The position numbers and the translations under genes were made by a program. The notes beneath the pieces were generated by a model, which was not told where the DNA came from, searched no databases, and worked only from the letters and a program-made list of their open reading frames with translations. A stretch of DNA of 64,000 nucleotides, from positions 150,527 through 214,526 of the IMG/VR virus record IMGVR_UViG_3300024308_000188. The stretch is one strand, 5' to 3'. Below, in pieces: positions 36,442 through 50,278 of the stretch; the stretch's first letter is position 1; each line of letters begins with the position of its first letter.

Positions 36442-36477
36442 AAAAAAGAAAAGGGAACCGTAATGGCTCCCCTTTCT
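36442..36477 (-). terminator. Terminator at the convergence of the two transcription arms
   Basis: Minus strand GAAAGGGGAGCC...GGTTCCCTTTTC followed by T-rich tail. Confidence 0.7.
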
Positions 36478-36941
36478 CATATTGCTACGACTAATGCAAG
36501 TGCAGTAATTATTTTCAGTGTTATGCTTTCAATACTATTCCGCAATTGTTCTTCCCTTCTGCTTTCCCTTTCATCATTCAAAACAACTTCCATTTTCAAT
36601 GCTCTGTATTCTTCCAGCTCAGCAAGTTCACGTATTAAGTTTGCGCGTTGGACAGTTAATTCTAAAATTAAATTGGCCTGTTCCACAAGTGCTGCATTAG
36701 ATTCAGCACTGATATAAGCTTGCTCTACTTTTACTAAGTCGTCAGGATCTACAAGTGCCCATGTTTTTCCATTTGCATCTTTATAACTTCCTACATCATG
36801 CGTGAAGGCTTCTGGAATACTCACAGGAGTTACTTCTTTGTGTACGAATTCTGCAATCTTTTTGGTCTGTATTTCTCTCGGCTCTGGCGCACTAGCACAT
36901 CCAAAAAGAAACATTGATAAAACAATTAGAGCGTATTTCAT
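36477..36941 (-). CDS. Lipoprotein with coiled coil and C-terminal hydrophobic segment (spanin-like)
   Basis: MKYALIVLSMFLFG-C lipobox; ATGA coupling at 36938-36941; C-term ITLKIITALALVVAI. Confidence 0.75.
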   Translation of the reverse strand: MKYALIVLSMFLFGCASAPEPREIQTKKIAEFVHKEVTPVSIPEAFTHDVGSYKDANGKTWALVDPDDLVKVEQAYISAESNAALVEQANLILELTVQRANLIRELAELEEYRALKMEVVLNDERESRREEQLRNSIESITLKIITALALVVAI

Positions 36942-37447
36942 TTCATTCCCCTGTTTTCTTCCCAAGCACGAAATCCAACTAAACGAAGTGCATTGTACAT
37001 TGCCCAAGATTTTCTGTCGGTTACGCCTTCAACAATTAAACCTATTTTAAAAATTAAGTCCGCATCTTTCTGCGTGTAAAATTGCCCTGATGGAGAAGGA
37101 ATATCATTTCTATAAAGTAGATCATGAATAACCGATGCCTTTAGTCCACTACCAAATGGAGGAAACAGCGACCATAGAAATCGAGGACTACTAATAAGAT
37201 CAGATTCAAAACCTTCTCTTGCTGTTAGCGTTACGATCTTAAACTTACGCAACTTATTAGCTGTTGGAAGTATAGGGCAATTATTTTCTATGTCCCAACA
37301 AAAATCCATACTAAAATCTTCAAGTAAATTAAACTTGTAGCCGCCATCATGTGCTTGAATTTTCAAACTATCGTGAAATTTCGCAGAGAAGGCATTGGCT
37401 ACAGAAATTTGCTCTGAATGTTTTACCAAGTAATTTTCTGTAGCCAT
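36938..37447 (-). CDS. DUF1353-family protein
   Basis: GFESDLISSPRFLWSLFPP..ASVIHDLLY..DADLIF..AMYNALR. Confidence 0.8.
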   Translation of the reverse strand: MATENYLVKHSEQISVANAFSAKFHDSLKIQAHDGGYKFNLLEDFSMDFCWDIENNCPILPTANKLRKFKIVTLTAREGFESDLISSPRFLWSLFPPFGSGLKASVIHDLLYRNDIPSPSGQFYTQKDADLIFKIGLIVEGVTDRKSWAMYNALRLVGFRAWEENRGMK

Positions 37448-37450
37448 TAA

Positions 37451-37813
37451 CTATCTCCGTTTTTTCATGCTTTCATTAAAATCAGCAATCTTTTGATCGT
37501 CCGTTTTATTAACTGCTTGATCTGCAACAGAATCGAAAGCAGCTTGCCCTTCAACTTTAATTTGTTGCATATCCGTTTGCTCAGCCTCTATTTCTTTCCC
37601 TACTGTGTTCGCATCAACAATTTTATTCTCAATAATATCTCTGTCGATTTCATCAAGTTTATCGGTTGTATCAGTAGGATTTTTTGAACGCGCTGCATAA
37701 GCATACGCGCCCAGTGTAAGTACGGCAAGCAATCCCATAAGAATATACTTGCCCCACTTTTTATACCATACTTCTTTAACTTCAGTAACTTGGTTCGTCT
37801 GGAGTTCTGACAT
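37451..37813 (-). CDS. Type II membrane protein with periplasmic coiled coil (i-spanin-like)
   Basis: KKWGK then YILMGLLAVLTLGAYAYAA, then helical hydrophilic tail. Confidence 0.65.
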   Translation of the reverse strand: MSELQTNQVTEVKEVWYKKWGKYILMGLLAVLTLGAYAYAARSKNPTDTTDKLDEIDRDIIENKIVDANTVGKEIEAEQTDMQQIKVEGQAAFDSVADQAVNKTDDQKIADFNESMKKRR

Positions 37814-38129
37814 TTGGATTCACCTTTGGGCCACCATCCCTGTTTAATATGCTATCAGCCATATAACTAATACCGATAAACGTCATTAAATTTGGATTTG
37901 GATCAATAATCAAAGTGGTAAAATAACCAGCTGTTGTAGTTAAGACAACTAAAATACTGCTTTGTTTGTTGCAAGTCCAGTATTTCACAAAATCCAGTTT
38001 ATCCTGCACACATTTTTTAACCCAGTGTATTGCTACACCAAGCAAAGTAAATGCGTAGGCTAAGATAAGATAATCCCATGAATATTTCATCAGTGGGCCG
38101 AGTAGTTGAGTTGCTGTTACTTGCTCCAT
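37782..38129 (-). CDS. Small multi-pass membrane protein (holin-like)
   Basis: 2-3 hydrophobic segments, charged C-tail, next to spanin-like genes. Confidence 0.55.
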   Translation of the reverse strand: MEQVTATQLLGPLMKYSWDYLILAYAFTLLGVAIHWVKKCVQDKLDFVKYWTCNKQSSILVVLTTTAGYFTTLIIDPNPNLMTFIGISYMADSILNRDGGPKVNPNVRTPDEPSY

Positions 38130-38143
38130 TTTATTTCCTTATG

Positions 38144-39274
38144 TTATAAATTAAGTTCAAACAATTGTTTGTTTACAATGCAATTTGGTCTGATATAATG
38201 TTCAGATCTTCCATTGAATTCTATATCAGCGCCGCTTGCTGGATCACCTATTGTAACCAAGGCTAAAGGTAATTTTCTTTCGGTTAAGGCCGAAGCAGTT
38301 GGATCTGGTGTTGGCACTAAAATACCCCAAGTAAAAGGATTTCTCGTGTTATCACTTAAGTCAGATTCTAATTCCCAATCTTTAAGACCTGCCGTAAAGT
38401 AAGTTGCATAGAATCTGGCTTGGGTTGAACTAAAAGTTTGATGTGTTGTTGCCAAACGTAAACCCTTTATCAAAGTTTTTGCAAAGTTTAACACGTAACT
38501 TATATTTTGTGTTGCCGTGAATGTAGGCAATTCCACTATCGAATTATTTGGCAAAATTAAAGATACGTTTGAAAAAGTTCTTGTAGCCACGTTATTCTGG
38601 CAAAGCATTCTGAATAAAAGAAAATCCGCTTGAACTGGTTCGTCGAACACGATAGCCATGTGTGCTCTGTGACTATCGTTAGTAACACCTGCTGTTGTAG
38701 ATCCTCTACGACCTAAATAAGTCCCATAGGAATCCAATTGTTCAAATGTACGTATTTTTTGACCAGATTGGCAATTTATTCCAGTCATCTGCAATAATGA
38801 ATTTACTGAATCCAGTGGAGGTAACACCGGAGGAATAACGAGCGCAGGTAAGCCCGTTCCCGCTTGCCAATCTGCCCAAGCATTATTGAATCTATATAAG
38901 ACACAATCACCTAAAGCTCTATTTCCAGAAGTATTAAGATCAAATACTTGTTGTGAAATATCTGGAATATAAGCTCCTTTCTTTGTGCCAATTTTTTCTC
39001 TTATTCCACCAAAATCACCGCTTGCTATATTGGCCTTTATTTTCAAACCATCTGATTTATCCAGAACTATATTTGGAAAACATACACCATCGGCGCTTTG
39101 AAGTAGCGACTTGAGATTTTCTGTCAAGGAACCTACATTCAAATCTAATGATTCAAGACTTGGTGGAACTGAACCGCTAAACATATACAAAACACTTTGA
39201 TGTGTTATGGAATTAATTGTTGCAGTGTTAATTAATGTTCTTACTAAGTTTTCATTTAATCCTGCGGTCAGCAT
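38144..39274 (-). CDS. Paralogous virion protein, long form (scaffold plus inserted domain)
   Basis: YMFSGSVP..FTWGILVP..VTIGDPASGADIE; shares ADFLL and FTAGLKD with 44845-45993. Confidence 0.75.
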   Translation of the reverse strand: MLTAGLNENLVRTLINTATINSITHQSVLYMFSGSVPPSLESLDLNVGSLTENLKSLLQSADGVCFPNIVLDKSDGLKIKANIASGDFGGIREKIGTKKGAYIPDISQQVFDLNTSGNRALGDCVLYRFNNAWADWQAGTGLPALVIPPVLPPLDSVNSLLQMTGINCQSGQKIRTFEQLDSYGTYLGRRGSTTAGVTNDSHRAHMAIVFDEPVQADFLLFRMLCQNNVATRTFSNVSLILPNNSIVELPTFTATQNISYVLNFAKTLIKGLRLATTHQTFSSTQARFYATYFTAGLKDWELESDLSDNTRNPFTWGILVPTPDPTASALTERKLPLALVTIGDPASGADIEFNGRSEHYIRPNCIVNKQLFELNL

Positions 39275-39293
39275 AAATTTTTCCTTAAGTAGA

Positions 39294-39307
39294 GGGGCCG
39301 AAGCCCC
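39294..39307 (-). terminator. GGGGC-UUCG-GCCCC hairpin (copy 1)
   Basis: Identical to 60976-60989; between co-directional genes. Confidence 0.6.
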
Positions 39308-39313
39308 AAATAC

Positions 39314-39805
39314 TTATATAGATTTAATTTCAAAGTCTGTAGTTTTATATAGTTTATCAGATTCAATCATTGAACCTAATAATTCCATATCGACTCCAGT
39401 TTCACCTATGTCACCAACTTTACCGATGAAACATTGATAAATCTTGGCGTCTGTTGTGTAGTTCGGTTCGTTGATGTTAGTTTGCACATACATAAAAACA
39501 AACCAATCGGCAGCACCAGGTGAGTTAACTGTGAAAGTTTCACCGCGTTGACTTAATAACCAACTTACTAGGTTTATTCCGGTACGTAATGGAACAACAG
39601 TGGCTGGATATGTAACACTTAATCTTAAAGTACCTAATGCTTTTAATGCGTTACTACTTATTGAACCATCAGCCTGAACTAATGCAGCAATTTGAGCTTG
39701 AGTTGGCATAGTGCCTCCCATAACCCACATTACTTTTTTAGCCACAGATGCTTGCTCGTACTTTGCACCAAGTAGTGCTTTCATGCTAGTGGATAATCCA
39801 ATCAT
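39314..39805 (-). CDS. Paralogous virion protein, short form
   Basis: VMGGTMPT..GAADWF..IGKVGDIG..DME..YKTTDF. Confidence 0.75.
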   Translation of the reverse strand: MIGLSTSMKALLGAKYEQASVAKKVMWVMGGTMPTQAQIAALVQADGSISSNALKALGTLRLSVTYPATVVPLRTGINLVSWLLSQRGETFTVNSPGAADWFVFMYVQTNINEPNYTTDAKIYQCFIGKVGDIGETGVDMELLGSMIESDKLYKTTDFEIKSI

Positions 39806-39807
39806 AA

Positions 39808-40716
39808 TTAAATCTCCACTACTTGAGGACGAATTTGACAGTGCATTACAACAACATCTTCGCCAGATTGCTTTGTTCCTATGTCTAAACGCATTTCCGT
39901 TGTTGCATTTGTTCCACCAGAAGATATTACCATGAAAGGATAATCTGCACCTACTGGTAATAAACTGCCGGTTACACTTACTGGACGTAACAGAGCAAAA
40001 TTAATTGATACTGCTGAATGTCCATTAATATTATCTGTCATGATCTTAATAGATTTTAGATCAAAAGCTGGTTGTCCGGCTGTAAACTCGATAATAACTT
40101 TAGTTACATCTGTTCTTGTGTTATTGAACATGAAACGATTGTTCGCTACTTTAGTAACAACGTGTTCAAGCTCTACTCCATTAGCCACGGTTTTGATATT
40201 GAAGTTTGGAACAACAGAACCAAAATCCATGTCAATAAAATTTATCTTTTGCGCGGAACAGTCTAATTCTATTTTATGACCTAATGCTGTTTGAGCAAAA
40301 GTCACATAAGTTGATTGTCTACCAAGTAGCGCACATTTCTCAGCAAAAGTAAATTGAGTTCTGTCTCCTGTACTCCAAACATTTAAAATGCGGCCTTGAT
40401 AAAGGGGATCATTGCCGTATCTTGGATTGGAAACATCTGGCCCCATTTTTCTCATAGGAATTAATGAAGATGCGTGATTAAATACCAAGTTTCCATTAAC
40501 AACACTTGAGGTCAGTAATGATACTGCTCGACAGTTATTAATCAACGCATCTACATCGTGCGGATTGAATTTTAAAAACTCTTCCGTCAATTCCTCAAAA
40601 CTAACTGGAAGAGTTAAACCCAAATCCGCTGCCGAAAAGAAAAATGAATGCCATCCAGAAGCACCGAAATAGTCTTGAATACTATTAGGTGCGTTAACTC
40701 CTGAATGGAATATCAT
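39808..40716 (-). CDS. Paralogous virion protein, long form
   Basis: C-terminal FALLRP..MVISSGG..TEMRL pattern; central beta-sandwich-like insert. Confidence 0.7.
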   Translation of the reverse strand: MIFHSGVNAPNSIQDYFGASGWHSFFFSAADLGLTLPVSFEELTEEFLKFNPHDVDALINNCRAVSLLTSSVVNGNLVFNHASSLIPMRKMGPDVSNPRYGNDPLYQGRILNVWSTGDRTQFTFAEKCALLGRQSTYVTFAQTALGHKIELDCSAQKINFIDMDFGSVVPNFNIKTVANGVELEHVVTKVANNRFMFNNTRTDVTKVIIEFTAGQPAFDLKSIKIMTDNINGHSAVSINFALLRPVSVTGSLLPVGADYPFMVISSGGTNATTEMRLDIGTKQSGEDVVVMHCQIRPQVVEI

Positions 40717-40718
40717 GG

Positions 40719-41255
40719 TTATACTCCGTCAAAAGTGAATATTTGATCATTCATTTTAACTGCGCGTGTGTTATCAATTGCGCCGCCGAACAAAATCATA
40801 TCAGCACCACTTCCAGAAGCACCAACAGTACCGATACCTACCCAGTGAACTGCACCGTTAGTTGTTGGAGCAACAACTGTACTGGCAACAACTGCCAGAA
40901 TAAAATAAGTTACATTACCAATCGCAGATTTAATCAATTCTTCTGGACGTTCGGATAATGGAAAACGCAATTTGTTTGCACCTTGCATCTGAAGTGCAAA
41001 GTTTGTTGGGTAGTTTACATAACCGCGTAATATTCCGCCTTTTGCAAGGGCAAGATTGTGAATAAGATCTTGACGATAAAGACCGCGAGTTGTACTTGCA
41101 ATACCTGATCCTGAAGTAGTGGAATATAAAGCAGCTTCCAAATCTTCTTTTGTTGGCATGGTGCCATCATACAGAGTAAGCATTTTGCGGTTTGTTACAC
41201 CTAAAATTGGTGATTGATTCAACAGTGGAATCATCGCATCAGTTGCTAATAACAT
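40719..41255 (-). CDS. Paralogous virion protein, short form
   Basis: LYDGTMPT..GNVTYF..IGTVGASGSGADM..VKMND. Confidence 0.75.
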   Translation of the reverse strand: MLLATDAMIPLLNQSPILGVTNRKMLTLYDGTMPTKEDLEAALYSTTSGSGIASTTRGLYRQDLIHNLALAKGGILRGYVNYPTNFALQMQGANKLRFPLSERPEELIKSAIGNVTYFILAVVASTVVAPTTNGAVHWVGIGTVGASGSGADMILFGGAIDNTRAVKMNDQIFTFDGV

Positions 41256-42205
41256 TATGCTACCTCCGTGACTACAGCAGTTTTAAGTTTAAGACTGATA
41301 ACACTAAAAATATCTTCGATTGTTCCGCTACTGCGATTTAATAGGCCCACGCCACCGTCAGCTGGCCCACCTAATGTAAAAATAAATGCGGGTACACGTT
41401 GAGCAAACAAACTTTCATAGATAGAAGCTACTGGAGCTGCCGGAACTAAAATACCCCAAGTTACAGGAATATTTTCTTTTGACATTACATTACTTGGTAC
41501 TGCCGAAGCAAAGAAACGAATGTAGTTATACACTAATGTATTTGCCGCAACAGTTCCTGTGTTATCCAGAAAACGCACTCTCCAACGACGAGCACTGATT
41601 GGAGCAAAAGTTGATTCAATACCGGCAGCATTATAAGTTTTAACAGCGATGCCTGTGGCTGCTACAACCCAAGCACTTCCGTTCCAATATTCAATCGCCA
41701 TTGTGCTTGGATTTCTTGTGGTAGTAACAAAATTTCCGTATACAACACGGTTCACACTAACAGCATCACCAAAATCATATTCAATCCAACCATCAGTTGT
41801 TATGTGAGTTGTGGCTGTTGCTGGAGCCAGTGCCATAGTCTCCAATCCATTCACAAAACCAGCTGGTTTTTCCAGTCCTTGAATGTTTGAATCGATAGAT
41901 TGTGGTAACAGTTGAATGCCAGCCAGACCATTAGTAGATCTTGCACCGTGCATTTTAAGTGTGAACAGTTGAGCTACGTTTTCAAATGCAGCTAATTCTG
42001 TTCCGTATGTTGTACTGTTTACAGACAGTAAACGTAAACCTGCAATGGCATTTGCATAAATGCCTTTCATATCTGACAAGCCGATTTCTGTATGAACTTC
42101 ATTTACTGAAGTTGGAACATCACCAGTCATCAGAAAAAGATTCCATTGTGTGCCAGCTTGCGCTTGCATACTTACCATATTCGCATTTTCTGCTGCAAAA
42201 TACAT
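41255..42205 (-). CDS. Paralogous virion protein, long form with discoidin (F5/8 type C)-like insert
   Basis: LMTGDVPT; WIEYDFG..IEYWNGSAW..ARRWRV; VTWGILVP. Confidence 0.75.
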   Translation of the reverse strand: MYFAAENANMVSMQAQAGTQWNLFLMTGDVPTSVNEVHTEIGLSDMKGIYANAIAGLRLLSVNSTTYGTELAAFENVAQLFTLKMHGARSTNGLAGIQLLPQSIDSNIQGLEKPAGFVNGLETMALAPATATTHITTDGWIEYDFGDAVSVNRVVYGNFVTTTRNPSTMAIEYWNGSAWVVAATGIAVKTYNAAGIESTFAPISARRWRVRFLDNTGTVAANTLVYNYIRFFASAVPSNVMSKENIPVTWGILVPAAPVASIYESLFAQRVPAFIFTLGGPADGGVGLLNRSSGTIEDIFSVISLKLKTAVVTEVA

Positions 42206-42215
42206 AACTGCGCCC

Positions 42216-42677
42216 TTATATCAAAGTTGAGGTTAATGTAGATTCATTCATCAGATTGTACTGCACAAATGCAGTAGCATTAAAATCTAAATCAGGATCT
42301 TGAGGCAATAACACACTAACTGTATGCAGAGAATTCTGTACAAATACTTGTCCAAAATTTGATTTAACCTCCACTACAGTGTATGGTATTTGCAATTCAT
42401 TTATTGAACTACTTAGCAAGTATGAACTTGCTTGTGGAACTAAAGGTCGTTCAACTGTAGTCGCTACTTGATCGAAAAATACTTCTGGCATGTTCAGGTA
42501 AGTTAGACTCAAGAAACTTAAAAAGCTTTGACCTATATTGTACTGACCTCTTTGTGCCAATGAAGGATTTCCGTCTGACAAAAAAACTTGATCGCCATCA
42601 ATCGTGACCGTTTCAGGAAACAATGTATCTGGATCAAATCTGTTTGCGTAGTATGCCGCGACATATACACTAGGCAT
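42216..42677 (-). CDS. Hypothetical (probable virion) protein
   Basis: AGGAG SD; within structural array. Confidence 0.7.
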   Translation of the reverse strand: MPSVYVAAYYANRFDPDTLFPETVTIDGDQVFLSDGNPSLAQRGQYNIGQSFLSFLSLTYLNMPEVFFDQVATTVERPLVPQASSYLLSSSINELQIPYTVVEVKSNFGQVFVQNSLHTVSVLLPQDPDLDFNATAFVQYNLMNESTLTSTLI

Positions 42678-42732
42678 CAGATGTCTCCTATTAAATGCAG
42701 AACATACTGCGTTTCATTTTCCCAGTTTTATT

Positions 42733-43062
42733 TTATTCTTCTGTCATTACAGTTTCGCATATTCTGTGAGACTGTGTAGTAGGTTGAGTATCCACAACAG
42801 ATCCTCTTGAAAATCTGGCTCGGATTGCAGAAGCTTCTGGTTCCGCCACTATAACACCATTTAAACGAAGTGGCAAAATGACGGCACCTGTTGCATCGTT
42901 AGTGACCCAATAGTATCCGTCAAAAAACCATTCGTTTTGTCTAGGATTTACCGATGTATAAAAGTTTACGTAACGTCTTGGTGAATTTAGACTATAGTAG
43001 CATGTGGTCACTGGAACTAACGTGGCTTCTTTTGAGTGACTGTGTACGTATATATTTGCCAT
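42733..43062 (-). CDS. Hypothetical protein
   Basis: 109 aa; aromatic/beta-rich. Confidence 0.65.
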   Translation of the reverse strand: MANIYVHSHSKEATLVPVTTCYYSLNSPRRYVNFYTSVNPRQNEWFFDGYYWVTNDATGAVILPLRLNGVIVAEPEASAIRARFSRGSVVDTQPTTQSHRICETVMTEE

Positions 43063-43071
43063 TACATTGCC

Positions 43072-43734
43072 TTAATTCGTTGAATATGTTTTAATGCACA
43101 CCGCATGTATAGCAGCACCTGTTCCTGAGATATAAGTTCCCAAAGAAGTCAGATTTAAAATATAGTTACGAAGCTCTACATTAGTTGAAGGTAAACCCGC
43201 TACTGAAAATTCACTTAAATATCCAGAAGCTCCAGGAGTATCTGTCCTACTTCTCCATCTGTACGTTATATTATCTACTTGGATATTGAACAAGGTTGTT
43301 CCGTTTAAGTAAGGTTCTGGTTGGTAGTTTTCGTATTTTACTGCTTGGTGCGTAGTTTGAACATACGAGCAGTAAATGCTTTCTGTATAATCATCATACT
43401 CAACTCTTTCAAATAAAGTGTAGTAAATGGGATTGTTATTTATATTCCTATTCGGCCCTATAAAGTATTTAGATTGTAACAAGGCAAAAGTCTGCGCTTG
43501 ATCCGCAACTACTACACCATTTAATCTAACAGATCCATATTGAGTTCCGTCTGGATTGTATGCCCATTCGTAACCACCAACAAAACCAAATCTTACATTC
43601 GGTGTTCCTGACTGCGGGTACGACATAAAATAACGTAACTCACCGTTATTTACTAAGTTATTAAAAGAAGGCTTGAATAAAATAACTGGTGTAGACTCTA
43701 CGCGATTTGTATTATGTAAATAAGTATTTCCCAT
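43072..43734 (-). CDS. Hypothetical protein, Tyr/Asn-rich
   Basis: 220 aa within structural array. Confidence 0.7.
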   Translation of the reverse strand: MGNTYLHNTNRVESTPVILFKPSFNNLVNNGELRYFMSYPQSGTPNVRFGFVGGYEWAYNPDGTQYGSVRLNGVVVADQAQTFALLQSKYFIGPNRNINNNPIYYTLFERVEYDDYTESIYCSYVQTTHQAVKYENYQPEPYLNGTTLFNIQVDNITYRWRSRTDTPGASGYLSEFSVAGLPSTNVELRNYILNLTSLGTYISGTGAAIHAVCIKTYSTN

Positions 43735-43738
43735 AATC

Positions 43739-44266
43739 CTAACCTAACAAGTTTTGAATTGTAAACTTGAAGTCGTTTATTTTGTAACGCTGTCCAGTTA
43801 CTATTGGGCCATTGTGTTCAAATTCAGCACCTGAACCTACGTTACCTACTGAACACAACATTAACATTCTGCAAATATTTCCTGCTGTGTAAGCAGCTGC
43901 ACCACCATGCAGAGAAATCATTGCAAGTGTTGGCGATCCATTAGCTAATCCAGTCATTTCTTCTGTGCGTTGTGTGAACATCCAAATGCGTTCATGTACA
44001 CTTCCACCTATTTTCTTTTGAGTAAAAGTAGGTAAAAACAGTTGACCAAGTTCAGTACGTGTTGAAATTAAATTTGTTCTGGCTAAACTGTGACTAATCA
44101 AACCTGTCGCAGCTGCTGTAACAGTAGCACTGTTTATATAATCTTCTTCAGGTTGAGTTAGTGGGCCACCAGTAAACAAACTAACTGAAACAGCCGTAGT
44201 ATTTGCAAGATCGTTTCTGTGCAAAGCGTATGTACTTGCTAATAAAGCACCAGTATTCATTTTCAT
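43739..44266 (-). CDS. Paralogous virion protein, short form
   Basis: LFTGGPLT..LCSVGNVGSGAEF..YKINDF. Confidence 0.75.
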   Translation of the reverse strand: MKMNTGALLASTYALHRNDLANTTAVSVSLFTGGPLTQPEEDYINSATVTAAATGLISHSLARTNLISTRTELGQLFLPTFTQKKIGGSVHERIWMFTQRTEEMTGLANGSPTLAMISLHGGAAAYTAGNICRMLMLCSVGNVGSGAEFEHNGPIVTGQRYKINDFKFTIQNLLG

Positions 44267-44281
44267 TGTGTGACGCCTCTA

Positions 44282-44848
44282 TTACCAGCCCATTTCAAGA
44301 CTTGGGAAATTAAATTGGAAATTAATGTCAGTAGCTTTAACCTTACTTTGCATAGTAATGGATGTTGATTCAATTTTTACATCAGCACTGCTTGCATTAT
44401 TTCCTACTGAACCGTTGAAAATAATTCGACTCGCATTTGCCGCCGCTGAAGTCCAACCTGTCCAACTTGAACCTACAATTGCGAGAGTGAAAGATCCAGC
44501 TGTACCTGCTGACAGTACAGTCATTAAGCTATCGATTTTGGATAAAGCAAATTTCTTGCGTAGACCAGTAGTTCCGCTATTGTCAGATCTTTGTGAAAAA
44601 GCCGGAACATATAATCGAGCTAATTCAACTCTTCCATTTGGCCCCATTAAAGTAGCTGGCCAATTTCCTGCAATAATTCCATTTGCGTCTGTGAATGTGT
44701 CCCTAATGACATTCATTTCAGTCTGAGAAAGTTCTGATCCACTCCACAAACTAAATACTATGCCTGTTCCCAAAGTTAAATTGGAATTTGCGTAGCGTTC
44801 TCCAAATAAAAGTAGCATTTGATCTGCAAAAGATTTATTAATTTTCAT
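44282..44848 (-). CDS. Paralogous virion protein, short form
   Basis: LWSGSELS..AGTAGSF..NGSVGNNASSADV..VKATDI. Confidence 0.75.
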   Translation of the reverse strand: MKINKSFADQMLLLFGERYANSNLTLGTGIVFSLWSGSELSQTEMNVIRDTFTDANGIIAGNWPATLMGPNGRVELARLYVPAFSQRSDNSGTTGLRKKFALSKIDSLMTVLSAGTAGSFTLAIVGSSWTGWTSAAANASRIIFNGSVGNNASSADVKIESTSITMQSKVKATDINFQFNFPSLEMGW

Positions 44849-45993
44849 GCGTCCACTTCCAAAAGTTTTTGACCATCAACAAAGAAGTTGCTTGGTATGA
44901 AATACTGACTTTGATTATTTATCTTAAGTTCAGCCGCTGATTCTGGAGTACCTACATTACACATGAGGACGGGAACTGTTTTTCCTTGCACACCAAGTAG
45001 TAGGTTACTTTCTACGTTTGGAATAACAACGGCTTTTGTCCACTCCGGTCTGGCTGTGTTTGCGTATGTCGCATTTGCACTCGGATCTTTTAATCCGGCA
45101 GTAAACTGTCTTATATAGAATGAGGACTGTCCTGAAGTTGTGGAGGTAGCATGTGAAATACACGCAACACCTTTTATCATTCGCTTTGTAAAATTAAAGC
45201 GATAAGTAGTGTTCACGTTTATTGAAGTACCTGCCGCTATTCCTATACTCACTAAAGCATTATTTTCATCTACAATATAAAGTGCGCCAATTTGCTGGTT
45301 ATTAAATGCACCAGTATCAGAGCGAATTATATGTAGTAAAAGAAAATCAGCTTCAACAGTTTCCTCAAATAAAAAACAACTAAAATCCCTTCTGCGTAAA
45401 GTACCGTCACCACCAGCTCTACGTCCAAAATCTACAGCAAAGTAAAGTGGGCCACCTAAAGTTTTGGCTGCTATACTATTTAAGTGCCAAGCACCGCCGT
45501 CAGATGCACCACCCAAAGCATAATACTGATCTTCCGTTGTCAGTGCTGGAACAGCTTGAGAAGGTGCGGCATTTGAGCTGCCTCCATTTCTATTTACATA
45601 AGTTCTTGCTGTAAATAAAACACAATTCCCTATGTTTTGGTTTGCGGCTGCTTGCCAATCATAGACCTGATCAGTTATGTTTACTGGCTTAAACCAACAA
45701 CCATCCCGTTCTTTGTACGTAGCATAATTTCCGTTTGAAAGTTGTAAACTTACTTTTCCACTTGCACGGACAACATTCAACTGAGCTGTGGTCATGCCAT
45801 CTGCTGCTAGTGCAACTGAACTTACCCAATTGTTATCTCTTGATTCAATTCCTGTGTTAAGATCTTCTATATTTTCTGCCGTAGACTCTCTGAATAAAAA
45901 TACTTGACAGTTATAACTTATATTTCCAGACGGAGTTATGTAATCAAAATCTAAAGATCTTAGTGCTGTGTCCATCAAACCAGTAGAGCGCAT
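44845..45993 (-). CDS. Paralogous virion protein, long form
   Basis: ATG 45993 after AGGAG; EADFLL, FTAGLKD, CNVGTPESAAEL. Confidence 0.75.
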   Translation of the reverse strand: MRSTGLMDTALRSLDFDYITPSGNISYNCQVFLFRESTAENIEDLNTGIESRDNNWVSSVALAADGMTTAQLNVVRASGKVSLQLSNGNYATYKERDGCWFKPVNITDQVYDWQAAANQNIGNCVLFTARTYVNRNGGSSNAAPSQAVPALTTEDQYYALGGASDGGAWHLNSIAAKTLGGPLYFAVDFGRRAGGDGTLRRRDFSCFLFEETVEADFLLLHIIRSDTGAFNNQQIGALYIVDENNALVSIGIAAGTSINVNTTYRFNFTKRMIKGVACISHATSTTSGQSSFYIRQFTAGLKDPSANATYANTARPEWTKAVVIPNVESNLLLGVQGKTVPVLMCNVGTPESAAELKINNQSQYFIPSNFFVDGQKLLEVDA

Positions 45994-46001
45994 AGCAACT
46001 C

Positions 46002-46994
46002 CTAGATAATCTGCCCAACTACTAAATAGTAGTTGTATTTGTTGTATTCGTCTGTTGTAGGTGCGTTCATTTTCATGTAAACGCTTTGGCTTGGCAGACC
46101 TGCACTGCACATTATAAGATGTTCAGTATTTTGATTACGGTTTCCATAAGTGTCGTTTTGTTTTGATAACAAGTTTGTGTAGGTAGCCGCACTAATATGC
46201 TCTGGAACAATAATGGCGTATTGTGGAACAGCTACGTTCTTACGAATGTCACCAGCATTGAATCCAAACTTACCAAAATAAGCGAAAGCTAAATCGATAT
46301 TCGCTGCTGTCCCAGTTGTACTTACTTTACGAATTCTGAAACGAGTAGCTGTTACCTCAGCAAATTTAACTATCCAATAACCAATTTGATTTATTGGACT
46401 TGTATCAATCAATGTCCAAGCAGATCCATTCCAGTATTCAATGTGAAATTGATACATCACTTGCGCGGCTGTTGTACTTTGCTTGATACCAAAACAGTTT
46501 ACTGCTCTTGGTGTATCATATTCGAATTCGATAGTTTCATCATTTTCTGTTGTACGAGCAATGAAAGTATCTAATCCGTCAAAGCCATAATCACCTTGCA
46601 TCTTATACATGACAGACATAAAAGTGTTGTGATCTCTGTAGTCATTTTTGCAGGTGATTTTTCTTGGATAGTAAATCAAATGATCATCAAAAGCTGTTGG
46701 ATTACTTGCTCCGTCTTTAACTGACACAACTTCACCGCGATATACAGCAACCAAATCGCCAGACTTTATTAATGATCCTGCGTTCACAAAATTTACATTG
46801 CGGTTATCTGTGAAATAGCTTGTGATAACACAAGCGTTCTTACAGTTTTCAATTAAACCTGCTGCTGTTTGCGGAAAACCTAATGAATTAAAATCCGCTG
46901 GCATTGTACCATCAAAGAAATACGCAAGATTTCTTGTTGGCATAATGTTCTTAAATGACTCAACTAAAGTTGGATTCATTCCAAAAGTTTTCAT
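46002..46994 (-). CDS. Paralogous virion protein, long form with discoidin-like insert
   Basis: FFDGTMP; IEFEYD..IEYWNGSAW..ATRFRI; YAIIVP. Confidence 0.75.
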   Translation of the reverse strand: MKTFGMNPTLVESFKNIMPTRNLAYFFDGTMPADFNSLGFPQTAAGLIENCKNACVITSYFTDNRNVNFVNAGSLIKSGDLVAVYRGEVVSVKDGASNPTAFDDHLIYYPRKITCKNDYRDHNTFMSVMYKMQGDYGFDGLDTFIARTTENDETIEFEYDTPRAVNCFGIKQSTTAAQVMYQFHIEYWNGSAWTLIDTSPINQIGYWIVKFAEVTATRFRIRKVSTTGTAANIDLAFAYFGKFGFNAGDIRKNVAVPQYAIIVPEHISAATYTNLLSKQNDTYGNRNQNTEHLIMCSAGLPSQSVYMKMNAPTTDEYNKYNYYLVVGQII

Positions 46995-46995
46995 T

Positions 46996-47388
46996 TCATA
47001 CCCCTATCTGAAGTGTAAAGAAAGCAGCATTCATTACATTTAAAGTTGGCAATGTAGTTGCTTCAAAATTTATGATGGCTGTGTACGTTTGAAATACAAC
47101 ATTCGAGTTAAGCTGCGTAGCCACAAAAGGCATATCAATGAACTGAGGTTGTACAAAAATAGAAATACTTGGCAATCCAGCAGAGTAAATTAATCCAACA
47201 TTTATAACAGGATGAATTAAATTTACTATTTCTGGAGTCGGCACATAATCAACTTGAGGGTTGTTACCTTGAATTACATTAGTGCCGTTTAAAGATAGAT
47301 CCCAAGTGATTTGTTTTGGAAAAAACACAAATTTATTCTGATCGAAATTCTTGTCGAAGTAATTGACGTCTTTGATTAAATTATTCAT
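46996..47388 (-). CDS. Hypothetical (probable virion) protein
   Basis: 130 aa within array. Confidence 0.7.
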   Translation of the reverse strand: MNNLIKDVNYFDKNFDQNKFVFFPKQITWDLSLNGTNVIQGNNPQVDYVPTPEIVNLIHPVINVGLIYSAGLPSISIFVQPQFIDMPFVATQLNSNVVFQTYTAIINFEATTLPTLNVMNAAFFTLQIGV

Positions 47389-47887
47389 GACCTACCTGCC
47401 TTATTTTGCAGTTTGTCATTTCATAAATTTCACCAACTGTCATGTTGCGATTTCCAACACGCAAATCACCGTCACCTGAAAAATCTGTTATGCTGCCACG
47501 TATTAAAAAGTTTGACGCACCATTAGCATTGTAAGCTACGTTTGTTGTTCTTGGATAAATCAAAAACCAATCAGGTTGACCTGAAACCATAACAGTTGGA
47601 GCTACTTTACTCCAATCAAAATCTAATAAGCTAGGAAAGTTTGCTTTCATTGCTGGATTTTGCGTTGTTATTAATTCTGCTTGTGCTAACACAGCACCGC
47701 CACGCGAACCTATCTGAGTTATCAAGGTTGCTATATTGGTAAAGATTCCGTTTGTTGCATTGAACAGTGTATCTAACTCTGTCGTCGTGTGTGTATTACC
47801 GCGAACAAAAATCATGTGATACCGTAAAGCAGTAGTACCTAAGTTTCTTTGGTACAATAAACTAGCAGCGGCTTTATTCATTTTCAT
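47381..47887 (-). CDS. Paralogous virion protein, short form
   Basis: FVRGNT..GQPDWF..RGSITDFSGDGDL..YEMTN. Confidence 0.75.
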   Translation of the reverse strand: MKMNKAAASLLYQRNLGTTALRYHMIFVRGNTHTTTELDTLFNATNGIFTNIATLITQIGSRGGAVLAQAELITTQNPAMKANFPSLLDFDWSKVAPTVMVSGQPDWFLIYPRTTNVAYNANGASNFLIRGSITDFSGDGDLRVGNRNMTVGEIYEMTNCKIRQVGHE

Positions 47888-48804
47888 GTTAATGTGGCCC
47901 TTGCTTCCATACGACCTGCAATCAAATTCATTTCAATGAAACGATTTGTTTGAAGTGTATTCAATTTGATTTCACTTAAATCGTAAGAAAATATTCTTAC
48001 GCTACTTGGTTCCCAAGTTGCAGGTGAAGTGTGTCCAGCTATAGGCATAGGGCAAACAATTAAAGATTCAACTGTTTCCTCCAATATATAATCGGAATCT
48101 GTCTCAAATGTTAGATAACTAAATTGCCAACCTATTTTGCTTCCTGAATTTATAGTACCTATTTTAATTGCAGTACATTCAGGAATATCAAAGACTTTAT
48201 TTACTATGTTCGTGTTGGCATCTGTTAAAGTAATGGTATCAGCAGAAAACCATTGATCGCCAACTTTGTATTGAACTGAAAGACCTAAAGGTCTTGAGTT
48301 TGCCGCACTTCCTGCAAAGTGAGCGTAAGCAATGTTCTTTATAGTTGTTGGGTTCTGAAATTCGTAGATAACAAAAGCAGTGATCGGAATACTAACTCGC
48401 TGTAATCGAGAAGTTCCGGCCAGAAGTGTTGGGGTATAAAACGGGGTAAGTGTAGCATTCCATTGCGAATCAGTTACACCTTCAAAATAAATACGAGTTG
48501 GTATTGCGCGTCTTAAGTTTGAACCTGAAATATCCAGCGTACCTCTGTGGTGAAATAATCTTCCGCTATCTGCAAAAATTAAATCAGCGTAAGGATTTAC
48601 CGCTGGATATATATTACGCAAGCTAATTAATCTACTTGCAATACAATTTTGTGACATGAATTCAAAAGAAGAAAGCGAGACAGGATCTTCTAGCAGCAAG
48701 TCCGTCTGCGCTGTATTTAGGTAGCCAAATAGCCAATCAGTATTTCCATTTGTGTTACCCGTCAAATTTGTAAGTGCTGACTTTTCCCACTGTATAAGAT
48801 CCAT
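47884..48804 (-). CDS. Paralogous virion protein, long form (divergent)
   Basis: ATG 48804 after GAGG; IYEFQNPTTI..VQYKVGDQW discoidin-like insert. Confidence 0.65.
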   Translation of the reverse strand: MDLIQWEKSALTNLTGNTNGNTDWLFGYLNTAQTDLLLEDPVSLSSFEFMSQNCIASRLISLRNIYPAVNPYADLIFADSGRLFHHRGTLDISGSNLRRAIPTRIYFEGVTDSQWNATLTPFYTPTLLAGTSRLQRVSIPITAFVIYEFQNPTTIKNIAYAHFAGSAANSRPLGLSVQYKVGDQWFSADTITLTDANTNIVNKVFDIPECTAIKIGTINSGSKIGWQFSYLTFETDSDYILEETVESLIVCPMPIAGHTSPATWEPSSVRIFSYDLSEIKLNTLQTNRFIEMNLIAGRMEARATLT

Positions 48805-48811
48805 ACTAACC

Positions 48812-49360
48812 TCAGACGAATAAAAGTCCTGCCATTGTAATAGCAATTGTTGACAGTGTTGTATCACGAGTGGCCGGAGCTACAATCGTTAATTCATCAC
48901 CTACACCAAAGATAATAGAGTTTGCACCAGCTAAACTCGCATAAACACCAACAGTTGCACCAGCTGCAAAAGTTAAGGTTCCTATTTGAGTTGTTACGCC
49001 ACTACGAACAGCATTAATAGTAAATACTGTTTGTGCTGTTGCAGCTACGTTTGCTCTTGCAGAACATCCAGCCAATCCAGCCTTTAGATAAAAAGTTCTT
49101 GCTGCTAAATGTCTGACCACAACATCACTGCTACGTGGACGATCAAAAATGCTCGAACTAATATCATAGCTGTTAAAGGCTACGTTTGTTACCAGAATCC
49201 AAGTTGACAAAAATGCGGAGTACACATAATTGCCTGCACCTGTTCCAGTTTTCTTAAAGCGTTTGCCGTCAGTTGGTGACGCTGGAAAACTTGCACCTTC
49301 TTCAACAGGTGAAATTTCCAGCGTACTTCCATCAAGCAAAGAAGCGCCATCTAATAACAT
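48812..49360 (-). CDS. Probable virion structural protein
   Basis: AGGAG SD; FPASPTDG motif; Ala/Thr/Gly-rich beta protein. Confidence 0.7.
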   Translation of the reverse strand: MLLDGASLLDGSTLEISPVEEGASFPASPTDGKRFKKTGTGAGNYVYSAFLSTWILVTNVAFNSYDISSSIFDRPRSSDVVVRHLAARTFYLKAGLAGCSARANVAATAQTVFTINAVRSGVTTQIGTLTFAAGATVGVYASLAGANSIIFGVGDELTIVAPATRDTTLSTIAITMAGLLFV

Positions 49361-49611: not shown

Positions 49612-50232
49612 TTATAAACAGTAAACTGTTCCAGTTGAAGAAGTTGTAAACGTCAGCACACTTTGATTCACTGAAGGACTGGATAATTCGTAATTCAAAA
49701 TTTCCATTCCGTAAGCGTTCAGAACGCGAATTGCTGGATCATAACCTAAGTTGTGATTTACCGTAACAGTTGTTTGACTGGTGAACGGTTGCTCATAACG
49801 AATATCTGGTTTAGCTAAACCATCAATGTTACCAACCATAATTGTTGCAACACCAGAAACTGCTACGTTAAATGTAATCTGAACTGTGTCAGCATCTAAT
49901 GTAATAATTTCTTGCGCTGTAGCAACTTCACCATCCGGCCAAGGCTGCACAATTAAACGTGTACTGTTCATATTGTGTTGCACTGTCCAAACTGTCGATG
50001 GAGTTTGTTGTTCGTGCGTATAAGTATTTTTCTCTTGCAGAAGTTGCACCCAACCTAAAGAAGTTGTTTGACCATCAACAATAGTTACACCCATAAGCAG
50101 ACGACCTTGGACACGCACTATTCGACCTTCACCTGCAAATTCGACACCATCGTCGTCAGCACTAAAGGCCAAATTTTTTACGGCGTTTCCCATGAAGTTT
50201 GTTCTACCTAAGACTTTCATAGGTTTCCTCAT
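49612..50232 (-). CDS. Protein with two HNLG-type modules
   Basis: YTHEQQTPSTVWTVQHNMN; YEQPFTSQTTVTVNHNLG. Confidence 0.75.
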   Translation of the reverse strand: MRKPMKVLGRTNFMGNAVKNLAFSADDDGVEFAGEGRIVRVQGRLLMGVTIVDGQTTSLGWVQLLQEKNTYTHEQQTPSTVWTVQHNMNSTRLIVQPWPDGEVATAQEIITLDADTVQITFNVAVSGVATIMVGNIDGLAKPDIRYEQPFTSQTTVTVNHNLGYDPAIRVLNAYGMEILNYELSSPSVNQSVLTFTTSSTGTVYCL

Positions 50233-50245
50233 TAAAGAAAATGAT

Positions 50246-50278
50246 AAAAAATTGGGGCAGTCAAATGCCGCCCCAATT
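50246..50278 (-). terminator. Rho-independent terminator
   Basis: AATTGGGGC...GCCCCAATT followed on the minus strand by a T run. Confidence 0.75.

What the first reader, a model, noticed from the sequence alone, without database searches (positions are those of the whole stretch)
38144..48804. Array of about 11 paralogous virion proteins: bare scaffolds alternating with scaffolds carrying inserted lectin-like domains
Five short genes (39314, 40719, 43739, 44282, 47381) share an N-terminal hhxGxxP/T motif and a C-terminal GxVG..sGad...y..nDF motif. Six long genes (38144, 39808, 41255, 44845, 46002, 47884) appear to keep these termini around a central insert. Inserts come in subtypes: discoidin-like IEYWNGSAW in 41255 and 46002, and ADFLL/FTAGLKD in 38144 and 44845. 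Short and long forms largely alternate. Inference: a combinatorial hair or whisker fibre built from heteromeric units displaying several glycan-binding heads. Hairy jumbo phages with paralogue families are known, so novelty lies in the insertion-based diversification.
Basis: partly seen in the sequence, partly recalled or inferred. Interest (0 to 1): 0.62.

Follow-up and report, generated by a model that had tools for sequence, protein, structure and literature searches.

The report
Expanded garland-type tail protein gene array
An uncultured jumbo phage carries a tight run of at least ten related genes for small tail-fibre "garland" proteins, half of them with a sugar-binding domain spliced into the middle, which probably form paired building blocks of a glycan-binding network at the tail end of the virus.

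Summary
The five short genes (163-188 aa) are one family. Five long genes (39808, 41255, 46002, 44845, 38144) keep the family's N- and C-terminal modules around an inserted domain. Gene 47884 shares only a weakly similar central domain; its termini are unresolved.

The scaffold is not new. The short proteins match the 139-residue chain of PDB 9RKV, which by its length is the "garland" protein of Agrobacterium phage 7-7-1, by fold (Z 8.6, next best 5.1). They match its genes gp012 and gp014 by profile. The insert of 41255 is a CBM32/discoidin-like domain (Z about 13). The inserts of 39808 and 46002 are homologous to it. The 38144/44845 insert is a second type of unproven fold.

A predicted 41255+40719 heterodimer passes its controls (ipSAE 0.77, best control 0.00). 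The two N-terminal arms are exchanged and the insert lies outside the interface.

Similar unannotated arrays exist in Erwinia phage Alexandra and Phage NCTB. Fold matches point to Y3, Yoloswag and Dickeya JA11/JA13. PaBG has none.

Best reading: paralogous garland or tail-fibre-network dimers displaying lectin domains at the baseplate or tail-fibre periphery. The "tail hair" reading is untested but not excluded. I rate it a new variant of a known kind.

The parts
47884..48804 (-). Long gene, about 306 aa from the ATG at 48804. The central region is weakly CBM32-like. The termini are not detectably of the garland family, so membership is doubtful.
   Evidence: Relatives align from residue 22 of the GTG-started ORF. 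Insert versus the 41255 insert: 49%. INS1 HMM E 6e-6. C module at or below 0.7% and N module 16-18%.
47381..47887 (-). Short garland-type paralogue (168 aa), the most divergent of the five.
   Evidence: hhalign 95.4% to the 43739 family and 94.7% to the 44282 family. No phrog_17152 hit.
46996..47388 (-). X1 family small gene (130 aa), function unknown, conserved in front of the 46002-type long gene in a relative.
   Evidence: BLASTP to L006_3546, E 4e-13. Weak link to 42216, 5.4%. X1 HMM.
46002..46994 (-). Long paralogue (330 aa): N module, then a CBM32/discoidin-like insert at about 104-248, then C module.
   Evidence: Insert 97.2% to the 41255 insert. N module 92-94% and C module 91-93% to other long genes. 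N module 73.9% to the short family.
44845..45993 (-). Long paralogue (382 aa from the ATG at 45993): N module, second insert type, C module.
   Evidence: 99.7% to the 38144 family. C-terminal block 66.6% to the deep short-family profile. Start inferred from relatives.
44282..44848 (-). Short garland-type paralogue (188 aa). Its orthologues in relatives are 609-623 aa with a C-terminal Laminin_G_3 domain.
   Evidence: phrog_17152 E 1.7e-7. BLASTP to residues 1-184 of L006_6037 and 1-182 of L007_529. Pfam tags of those genes.
43739..44266 (-). Short garland-type paralogue (175 aa).
   Evidence: phrog_17152 E 3.7e-7. hhalign 98.9% to the 44282 family.
43072..43734 (-). X2 family gene (220 aa), function unknown. 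No homologue found in the related arrays.
   Evidence: Related only to 42733 (BLASTP E 6e-4; hhalign 50%). No PHROG hit.
42733..43062 (-). X2 family gene (109 aa), resembles the N-terminal third of 43072.
42216..42677 (-). X1 family small gene (153 aa), conserved in front of the 41255-type long gene in relatives.
   Evidence: BLASTP to L006_8448 and L003_8568. X1 HMM.
41255..42205 (-). Long paralogue (316 aa): N module 1-93, CBM32/discoidin-like insert 94-237, C module 238-316. Its stop overlaps the start of 40719.
   Evidence: Pfam PF22633 28.3 bits against a cut-off of 27.8. AF2 model pLDDT 83.1, pTM 0.86. CBM32 structures at Z about 13, rmsd about 2.5 A, 134 residues aligned. C module 87.8% to the short family.
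40719..41255 (-). Short garland-type paralogue (178 aa). This is the one that was modelled.
   Evidence: phrog_17152 E 5e-13. AF2 pLDDT 78.6, pTM 0.77. 9rkv_A at Foldseek E 2.9e-4 and VIA Z 8.6. Predicted dimer with 41255.
39808..40716 (-). Long paralogue (302 aa): N module, CBM32-like insert, C module.
   Evidence: Full-length 97.9% to the 41255 family. Insert 99.2%. C module 83.1% to the short family.
39314..39805 (-). Short garland-type paralogue (163 aa).
   Evidence: hhalign 99.2% to the 40719 family. phrog_17152 E 5e-4.
38144..39274 (-). Long paralogue (376 aa): N module, second insert type at about 150-304, C module. It is the last gene of the array.
   Evidence: Short-family HMM E 1e-6 in two pieces, residues 3-42 and 309-356. 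C module 95.6% and N module 76.6% to the short family. Atlas lead for the insert: F5/8 type C at 0.79, a lead only.

Best explanation
The array encodes at least ten paralogues of the "garland" protein family of contractile-tailed phages. Known members are 7-7-1 gp014/gp012 and Milano gp125/gp127, whose fold is reported to resemble T4 gp8 and A511 gp105, the connectors of the tail-fibre network.

Shown here:
- The short proteins have that fold and are profile-level homologues of the 7-7-1 proteins.
- Five long proteins are the same scaffold with a beta-sandwich domain of roughly 140-155 residues inserted between the N and C modules.
- In 41255, 39808 and 46002 that insert is a CBM32/discoidin-type domain.
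- In relatives, one short member instead carries a C-terminal LamG domain.

Predicted in silico: a long protein and its downstream short neighbour form a pseudo-symmetric dimer. Each partner lays its N-terminal arm on the other's central C-module strand. The insert points away from the interface.

Inferred by analogy with solved phages: such dimers string together into a garland, or into arms, at the baseplate and tail-fibre periphery. There the displayed lectin domains would give multivalent, low-affinity binding to host surface polysaccharide. Gain, loss and domain swapping within the array would tune host range.
For: Family and paralogy.

Split homology of long to short. Cross controls stayed at or below 4.1%. 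Proteins of NCTB and Alexandra that were not in the training set behave the same way.

Fold:
- The short model matches 9rkv_A at Foldseek E 2.9e-4.
- VIA gives Z 8.6, rmsd 4.0 A, 125 of 139 residues aligned. The next best is 4.2 among Foldseek's top 1000 and 5.1 among 48,161 representatives.
- 7-7-1 gp014 is 141 aa and gp012 is 143 aa. Both are annotated as virion structural proteins and lie beside the tail fibre gene gp015.
- The short-family HMM scores gp012 at 28.2 bits and gp014 at 15.3 bits. hhalign gives 94.5% and 95.1% for the C half alone.

Role of garland proteins in virions: PMC12796354 and PMC10811340. Related gp8-like filaments in Goslar, A511 and phage 812: PMC13742148.

Insert.

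Dimer: median ipSAE 0.77, best of 3 controls 0.00. That mark was reached by 58 of 80 solved complexes and 2 of 110 mismatched pairs. The runs agree in at least 46% of contacts, and the partner's pLDDT is at least 70. Interface residues 1-17, 30-37, 65-70, 255-277 and 307-313 of the long chain mirror 1-18, 36-44, 56-60/90-93, 137-143 and 171-177 of the short chain.

Context: the array lies directly downstream of tail-fibre-type genes. Genes overlap or are separated by 1-55 nt. The 41255-40719-39808-39314 block keeps its order in five related contigs.
Against: - No direct evidence that any of these proteins is in the virion, or where.
- The scaffold of a long protein was never compared with the short fold in 3D.
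- Similarity of the short model to T4 gp8 itself is weak (5hx2_C, Z 3.2). The link to the wider gp8-like group therefore rests on the Milano paper's statement.
- The dimer score comes from the model's own confidence. Close cousins of a true partner also pass, so it shows the mode of pairing, not which paralogues pair. It may also partly reflect memory of solved garland dimers.
- The fold of the 38144/44845 insert is unproven: sequence comparison to the CBM32-type inserts gave 1.1% or less.
- Sugar binding was not examined at residue level.
Confidence: 0.6

Rival explanations
1. Tail hairs. The paralogues polymerise into the whisker-like fibres seen along the contractile tail of "hairy" jumbo myoviruses. 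Short/long heterodimers would be the beads and the lectin inserts the exposed heads.
For: The window's phage belongs with Y3, Yoloswag, JA11/13, Alexandra and NCTB, judged by its tail protein gene and by fold matches of both models. Y3, the JA phages and AD1 are described as hairy Myoviridae (PMC6143709). Proteins with the gp8-like fold are known to form end-to-end filaments (PMC13742148, PMC10811340). In Goslar, a different paralogous family, some of whose members carry carbohydrate-binding domains, forms tail-associated filaments.
Against: The only solved relative sits around the distal tail fibres, not along the sheath (PMC12796354). The array is adjacent to tail-fibre genes. No paper found here assigns a protein to the hairs of this lineage. 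Whether hairiness tracks with presence of the array could not be checked. PaBG lacks the family, but its morphology was not established here.
Confidence: 0.22
2. Assembly factors. The short proteins act as chaperones or scaffolds for the neighbouring long lectin proteins or for tail fibres, and are absent or substoichiometric in the finished particle.
For: The short/long gene pairing with overlapping stop and start codons resembles fibre-chaperone pairs. T4 gp8 is also needed for folding of gp6 (PMC3004832). A DUF1353 / "tail assembly chaperone" PHROG gene follows the array.
Against: Short and long proteins are homologous to each other rather than a client-chaperone pair. The 7-7-1 homologues are resolved in the virion and annotated as virion structural proteins. 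The predicted complex is a symmetric-type dimer of like folds.
Confidence: 0.08
3. Non-virion function. The array encodes intracellular or released glycan-binding proteins, for example for host-surface modification or superinfection control, that merely reuse a tail-protein fold.
For: All members are unannotated. No expression or proteome data exist for this phage: no run on record as RNA holds the stretch.
Against: The array lies inside the tail-fibre module on the same strand. It is homologous to structural proteins. Family scans found no signal for enzymatic domains.
Confidence: 0.04

Closest known systems
Garland proteins of Agrobacterium phages 7-7-1 (gp014, and its paralogue gp012) and Milano (gp125/gp127)
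   Same: Same fold (Z 8.6 to 9rkv_A) and detectable profile homology. Small size. Genes sit next to tail-fibre genes. Paralogous copies occur in one genome. Homo- or heterodimers are the building unit.
   Different: Those phages have two copies of about 140 aa. Here there are at least ten copies of 163-382 aa, with longer N-terminal halves. Half of them carry an inserted beta-sandwich domain. Location in the virion is unknown.
T4 gp8 / Listeria phage A511 gp105 / Staphylococcus phage 812 gp118 / Goslar gp32 (baseplate wedge to tail-fibre-network connectors, arm segments)
   Same: The literature describes them as sharing the garland fold. They form two-fold dimers that chain end to end, linking receptor-binding proteins to the baseplate (PMC10811340, PMC13742148).
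   Different: Direct structural similarity measured here is weak (5hx2_C Z 3.2; a phi812 baseplate chain Z 3.8). No sequence signal was found. Those phages usually have one such gene, not an array.
CBM32 / F5/8 type C (discoidin) / NedA-like galactose-binding domains
   Same: The insert of 41255 matches at Pfam level and at Z about 13 over about 134 residues. The 39808 and 46002 inserts are homologous to it.
   Different: Here the domain is nested inside a loop of another domain rather than appended to an enzyme. Ligand and binding residues are unknown. The 38144/44845 insert is not demonstrably of this type.
Goslar DUF7941 paralogues and phiKZ gp131 paralogues
   Same: Analogous logic: a jumbo phage multiplies one tail-associated module, and some copies carry carbohydrate-binding or other recognition domains.
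   Different: A different fold family: no DUF7941 or other Pfam match was found at E up to 1 for the ten proteins scanned. There the recognition domains are appended at the C-terminus, not inserted.

Membership tests
Garland protein family (7-7-1 gp014/gp012, Milano gp125/gp127) | Fold of the garland protein | tested here: met
   The AF2 model of 40719 against 9rkv_A: Foldseek E 2.9e-4, VIA Z 8.6, rmsd 4.0 A, 125 of 139 residues aligned. It is the only hit at Z 8 or above among 48,161 representatives. Chain A is taken to be the garland protein from its length, 139 modelled residues against 141 aa for gp014.
Garland protein family (7-7-1 gp014/gp012, Milano gp125/gp127) | Sequence homology to a member seen in a virion | tested here: met
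   The 169-sequence short-family HMM scores gp012 at 28.2 bits and gp014 at 15.3 bits. hhalign gives 94.5% and 95.1% for the C half. The match is strong only over the C-terminal half.
Garland protein family (7-7-1 gp014/gp012, Milano gp125/gp127) | Dimer as the building unit | tested here: met
   In silico only. 41255+40719 gave ipSAE 0.77 against 0.00 for the best control, with reciprocal N-arm exchange. Partner specificity was not tested.
Garland protein family (7-7-1 gp014/gp012, Milano gp125/gp127) | Virion component wrapped around the distal parts of tail fibres or spikes | not testable with these tools
   The phage is an uncultured metagenomic one, found in subsurface, soil and wastewater runs. 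No proteome or map is available.
T4 gp8-like connectors (gp8, A511 gp105) | Structural similarity to T4 gp8 | tested here: inconclusive
   5hx2_C (332 residues, presumed to be gp8 from its length) scores only Z 3.2. No gp8 or gp105 match appears in BFVD for either model.
CBM32 / F5_F8_type_C | Domain profile and beta-sandwich fold | tested here: met
   For 41255: PF22633 28.3 bits against a cut-off of 27.8; Z 12-13 to many CBM32 structures; the PDB profile search hits YeCBM32. 39808 and 46002 qualify by homology to it. For 38144/44845 the evidence is inconclusive.
CBM32 / F5_F8_type_C | Carbohydrate-binding site residues and metal site | not tested
   No residue-level comparison was made.
DUF7941 tail-filament family of chimalliviruses | Pfam DUF7941 module | tested here: not met
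   No Pfam family other than F5/8 type C was found at E up to 1 for the ten proteins scanned.

The most novel reading that the evidence does not exclude
The whisker-like "hairs" of the Y3/JA/Alexandra lineage of hairy jumbo myoviruses are beads-on-a-string filaments of garland-type short/long heterodimers. Their combinatorial set of inserted CBM32-like domains and fused LamG domains would give each phage a programmable glycan-binding coat along the tail.
Probability: 0.2. Interest if true: 0.75.

Novelty: new variant of a known kind. Interest (0 to 1): 0.55.

Why it matters
It gives a name and a testable structural role to about 10 kb of "hypothetical" genes. These genes recur in at least two published jumbo phages (Alexandra, NCTB), probably in Y3, Yoloswag and the Dickeya JA phages, and in many metagenomic relatives. 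The short family alone has 654 cluster representatives at E up to 0.001.

It links phrog_17152 to the recently solved garland proteins. It shows that this small scaffold can be multiplied ten-fold. It also shows two ways of loading the scaffold with lectin domains: loop insertion and C-terminal fusion.

If the products pair and chain as predicted, the array is a compact system for diversifying host-glycan recognition. It is also a candidate for the unidentified appendages of hairy jumbo phages. Both points matter for predicting and engineering host range in phages considered for plant-disease biocontrol.

Tried and rejected
- Megablast of the whole array and tblastn of 40719 against 50,697 phage records found nothing. 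The relatives are too distant for BLAST, and only profiles and folds reach them.
- Profile searches of the PDB by sequence found nothing for the scaffold. For A3 they found only CBM32-type domains.
- Whole-protein hhalign of long against short families gave only 2-20%. The relation became clear only with a deeper short-family profile and module-wise comparison.
- The long model's fold search was filled by CBM32 hits, so its scaffold was not tested in 3D.
- The 38144/44845 insert could not be tied to the CBM32-type inserts by sequence (1.1% or less). The Atlas feature search gave only a sub-threshold lead, 0.79.
- 47884 could not be placed in the family.
- The X1 and X2 genes show no relation to 7-7-1 gp013, the gene between its two garland genes and the positional counterpart of Milano gp126, the paper's candidate "string".
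- Literature searches found no protein assignment for the hairs of this lineage and no virion proteome covering the array.
- A role as DUF7941-type filaments was considered and rejected: no Pfam match.
- Read laying was not used. No listed run is on record as RNA.
Full report
**Setting.** The window is the last 64 kb of a single 214.5-kb contig. It is an uncultured jumbo phage found in subsurface, soil and wastewater metagenomes. Its 564-aa tail protein gene (50296-51990) is 51% identical to that of Phage NCTB and 41% to PaBG. It is 33-35% identical to Erwinia phages of the Alexandra type, with further matches in Dickeya phages. Genes from 36.4 to 64 kb run on the minus strand. Upstream of the array lie tail-fibre-type genes. 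Downstream lie small membrane proteins and a DUF1353 gene.

**The observation.** All eleven genes exist as described, and the quoted motifs are in the translations. Two starts need correcting. They align from residue 40 of the 44845 ORF, so its start is the ATG at 45993. The cluster is compact: neighbours overlap by 1-8 nt or are 1-55 nt apart. No convincing terminator lies inside it. A strong one (11-bp stem) follows gene 50296 at 50250-50278.

**Paralogy of the short genes.**
- BLASTP already links 39314~40719 (E 4e-11) and 43739~44282 (E 5e-7).
- Four short genes hit phrog_17152, a family of unknown function.
- I fetched related arrays from five metagenomic contigs (L003-L008) and built orthogroup alignments. 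With these, all five short families are mutually related at 76-99% hhalign probability. This includes 47381, through 43739 (95.4%) and 44282 (94.7%).
- The 29-sequence alignment A2 shows the invariant Gly of the N-terminal motif and the conserved C-terminal block.
- A profile search of 1.84 billion representatives found 654 proteins at E up to 0.001. Of the 150 best that are listed, nearly all are 160-200 aa, and a few are 555-620 aa with the module at the N-terminus.

**Are the long genes the same scaffold with an insert?**
- Whole-protein comparison was weak but always collinear.
- With a 169-sequence short-family profile, the C-terminal 50-70 residues of 38144 (84.6%), 44845 (66.6%) and 39808 (42.3%) matched the C half of the short family. 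The N-terminal 30-40 residues of 38144, 46002, 41255 and 39808 matched its N-terminus. Nine unrelated neighbouring genes scored 0.7% or less.
- As an HMM on all 518 ORFs of the genome, the same profile hit 38144 at E 1e-6 in two pieces (residues 3-42 and 309-356). It hit 46002 in N and C pieces.
- I then cut every long family into N module, insert and C module. Long N modules match each other at 64-99.9% and the short N half at 27-77%. Long C modules match each other at 91-99.9% and the short C half at 25-96%. All 36 N-against-C controls were 4.1% or less.
- Long proteins that played no part in building the profiles behave the same way. Alexandra's 318-aa gp090 is hit on both sides of a 128-residue gap. 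Several 345-402-aa NCTB proteins are hit by the short-family HMM at their C-termini, down to E 1e-7.
- Gene 47884 is the exception: C module 0.7% or less, N module 16-18%.

So ten genes belong to one family, and five of them have the insertion architecture.

**The inserts.**
- 41255 passes Pfam's cut-off for the NedA-like galactose-binding domain (PF22633: 28.3 bits against 27.8).
- Its AF2 model (pLDDT 83.1, pTM 0.86) aligns over residues 94-237 with dozens of CBM32/discoidin structures at Z 12-13, rmsd about 2.5 A, about 134 residues.
- The inserts of 39808 (99.2%) and 46002 (97.2%) are homologous to it. The central part of 47884 is weakly similar (49%; HMM E 6e-6).
- 38144 and 44845 share a second insert type (99.7% to each other overall). 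It shows no sequence relation to the first type. It has only a sub-threshold language-model lead to F5/8 type C (0.79), so its fold is open.
- In relatives, the orthologue of short gene 44282 is 609-623 aa with a C-terminal Laminin_G_3 domain. The scaffold therefore acquires lectin-like domains in two ways.

**What the scaffold is.**
- The AF2 model of 40719 (pLDDT 78.6, pTM 0.77) has one clear match in the PDB. That is chain A of 9RKV, "Agrobacterium phage 7-7-1 tail fibers": Foldseek E 2.9e-4, and VIA Z 8.6, rmsd 4.0 A, 125 of 139 residues aligned. The next best match is 4.2 among Foldseek's top 1000 and 5.1 in an exhaustive comparison with 48,161 representatives.
- The 7-7-1 paper describes that entry as a long tail fibre (gp015), short tail fibres, and the small "garland" protein gp014, which surrounds the distal parts of the fibres (PMC12796354).
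- In the genome, gp014 is 141 aa and a paralogue, gp012, is 143 aa. Both are annotated as virion structural proteins and lie just after gp015. That is why I take the 139-residue chain to be the garland protein.
- The relation is also visible in sequence. The short-family HMM scores gp012 at 28.2 bits and gp014 at 15.3 bits. hhalign gives 94.5%, or 95.1% for the C half alone.
- The Milano paper reports two paralogous garland proteins that form homo- and/or heterodimers. It states that their fold resembles T4 gp8 and A511 gp105, dimers that string together and connect receptor-binding proteins to the baseplate (PMC10811340). The Goslar paper describes the same kind of filament for gp32 and for phage 812 gp118 (PMC13742148).
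- My own measurement of similarity to T4 gp8 is weak (Z 3.2), so I do not claim membership of that wider group on my own data.

**Pairing.** The complex test on 41255 and its downstream neighbour 40719 gave a median ipSAE of 0.77, with the best of three controls at 0.00. That mark was reached by 58 of 80 solved complexes and 2 of 110 mismatched pairs. The counts hold only roughly, because my own alignments were used. The runs agreed in at least 46% of contacts, and the partner's pLDDT was at least 70.

The interface is reciprocal. Residues 3-8 of the short chain lie on strand 271-276 of the long chain. Residue 4 of the long chain lies on 138-139 of the short chain. The N-terminal helices meet. 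This mirror relation is what two copies of one fold would give, and it independently supports the residue equivalences found by profile comparison. The insert (94-237) contributes no interface residues.

The test cannot say which paralogues pair in reality, because cousins of a true partner also pass. A solved garland dimer may also have informed the model.

**Distribution.**
- The same kind of array follows the same tail protein gene in Erwinia phage Alexandra (gp079-gp094, all annotated as hypothetical).
- Phage NCTB has a 16-gene array at another place (141-155 kb).
- PaBG has no match.
- Both models find full-length structural matches in BFVD. These are proteins of Y3, Yoloswag, JA11/JA13 and a set of unnamed entries that I suspect, but did not verify, are NCTB proteins.
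- Across relatives, the block 41255-40719-39808-39314 keeps its order. Other positions gain and lose genes.
- Four unrelated small genes sit inside the window's array. Two are X1 genes (46996, 42216), each in front of a CBM32-type long gene, as in relatives. Two are X2 genes (43072, 42733), seen only here.

**Interpretation.** The best-supported reading is an expanded set of garland-type dimers that carry lectin domains and belong to the tail-fibre and baseplate periphery.

The steps that are shown are the family, the insertion architecture and the nature of the 41255-type insert. The dimer is predicted in silico only. The inferred steps are virion location, chaining into a garland or arms, and glycan binding.

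This lineage is described as hairy (PMC6143709), and gp8-like dimers can form filaments. But nothing here places these proteins along the tail. I put it at about one in five. Chaperone-only and non-virion roles are less likely, because short and long proteins are homologues and the solved relatives are structural.

**Novelty.** The scaffold family and the CBM32 fold are both known. Paralogous tail modules with appended recognition domains are known in other jumbo phages: Goslar DUF7941 and phiKZ gp131. In the papers I could search, I did not find three things:
- the assignment of phrog_17152 and these arrays to the garland family;
- the ten-fold expansion;
- the nesting of a lectin domain inside the scaffold.

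I therefore rate it a new variant of a known kind, of moderate interest.

Noticed in passing
window 36477-38129, minus strand: A lysis-like set lies directly after the array. 37782-38129 is 115 aa with three hydrophobic segments, holin-like. 37451-37813 is 120 aa with one N-terminal membrane segment. 36938-37447 is DUF1353 / phrog_1158, "tail assembly chaperone". The ORF 36477-37007 has an internal Met that starts a lipoprotein signal (lipobox Cys), and it ends in a C-terminal hydrophobic stretch, like a unimolecular spanin. Alexandra has an annotated lipoprotein at the matching place.
   Followed up: partly
window 50250-50278, minus strand: The strongest terminator-like hairpin of the region (11-bp stem, 6 GC pairs, T run) sits between the 564-aa tail protein gene and gene 49612. 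No comparable site lies inside the array.
   Followed up: no
window 49612-50232, 50296-51990, 54520-55434: These three genes share a domain (phrog_21918 / phrog_30556). Gene 54520 also hits phrog_24148, labelled "HNH endonuclease"; PaBG and Alexandra annotate an HNH endonuclease gene in this part of their loci. The shared domain among tail genes suggests that this label may be a misnomer.
   Followed up: no
whole contig G000:C1: The genome in hand is 214.5 kb. Proteins 99% identical to 41255 and 38144 occur on contigs up to 319.5 kb, and a 90% relative on one of 329 kb. The contig may therefore be an incomplete genome.
   Followed up: no
window 46996-47388 and 42216-42677: The X1 family is 130-198 aa and has a conserved N-terminal motif, aromatic-x-x-x-F-D followed by F-P. 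It lies just upstream of a CBM32-type long gene both here and in relatives. Function unknown; no PHROG hit and no relation to 7-7-1 gp013; it was not scanned against Pfam.
   Followed up: partly
window 42733-43734: The X2 pair: 42733 (109 aa) looks like a shortened copy of the N-terminal third of 43072 (220 aa). Neither has a homologue in the five related arrays.
   Followed up: partly
L006:6037-7899, L007:529-2358, L008:3734-5599: In relatives, the orthologue of short gene 44282 is a 609-623-aa fusion of the garland module with a Laminin_G_3 domain. The window's copy stops cleanly after the module, and no remnant follows it.
   Followed up: partly
L013:6334-6765 (phage 7-7-1 gp012): 7-7-1 gp012 (143 aa) scores higher against the short-family profile than gp014 does. 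The paper names only gp014 as the garland protein. As in Milano (gp125/gp127), 7-7-1 may therefore have two garland paralogues, separated by a third small gene, gp013.
   Followed up: partly
window 44325-44726, plus strand: A 133-aa ORF lies antisense inside gene 44282. It is almost certainly not a gene.
   Followed up: no
window 48812-49360, minus strand: This 182-aa gene, just upstream of the array, has a C-terminal part that matches tail-fibre PHROGs (phrog_7049, E 1.4e-12). It is conserved in relatives, NCTB and PaBG by position. It may be the fibre that the array products associate with.
   Followed up: no
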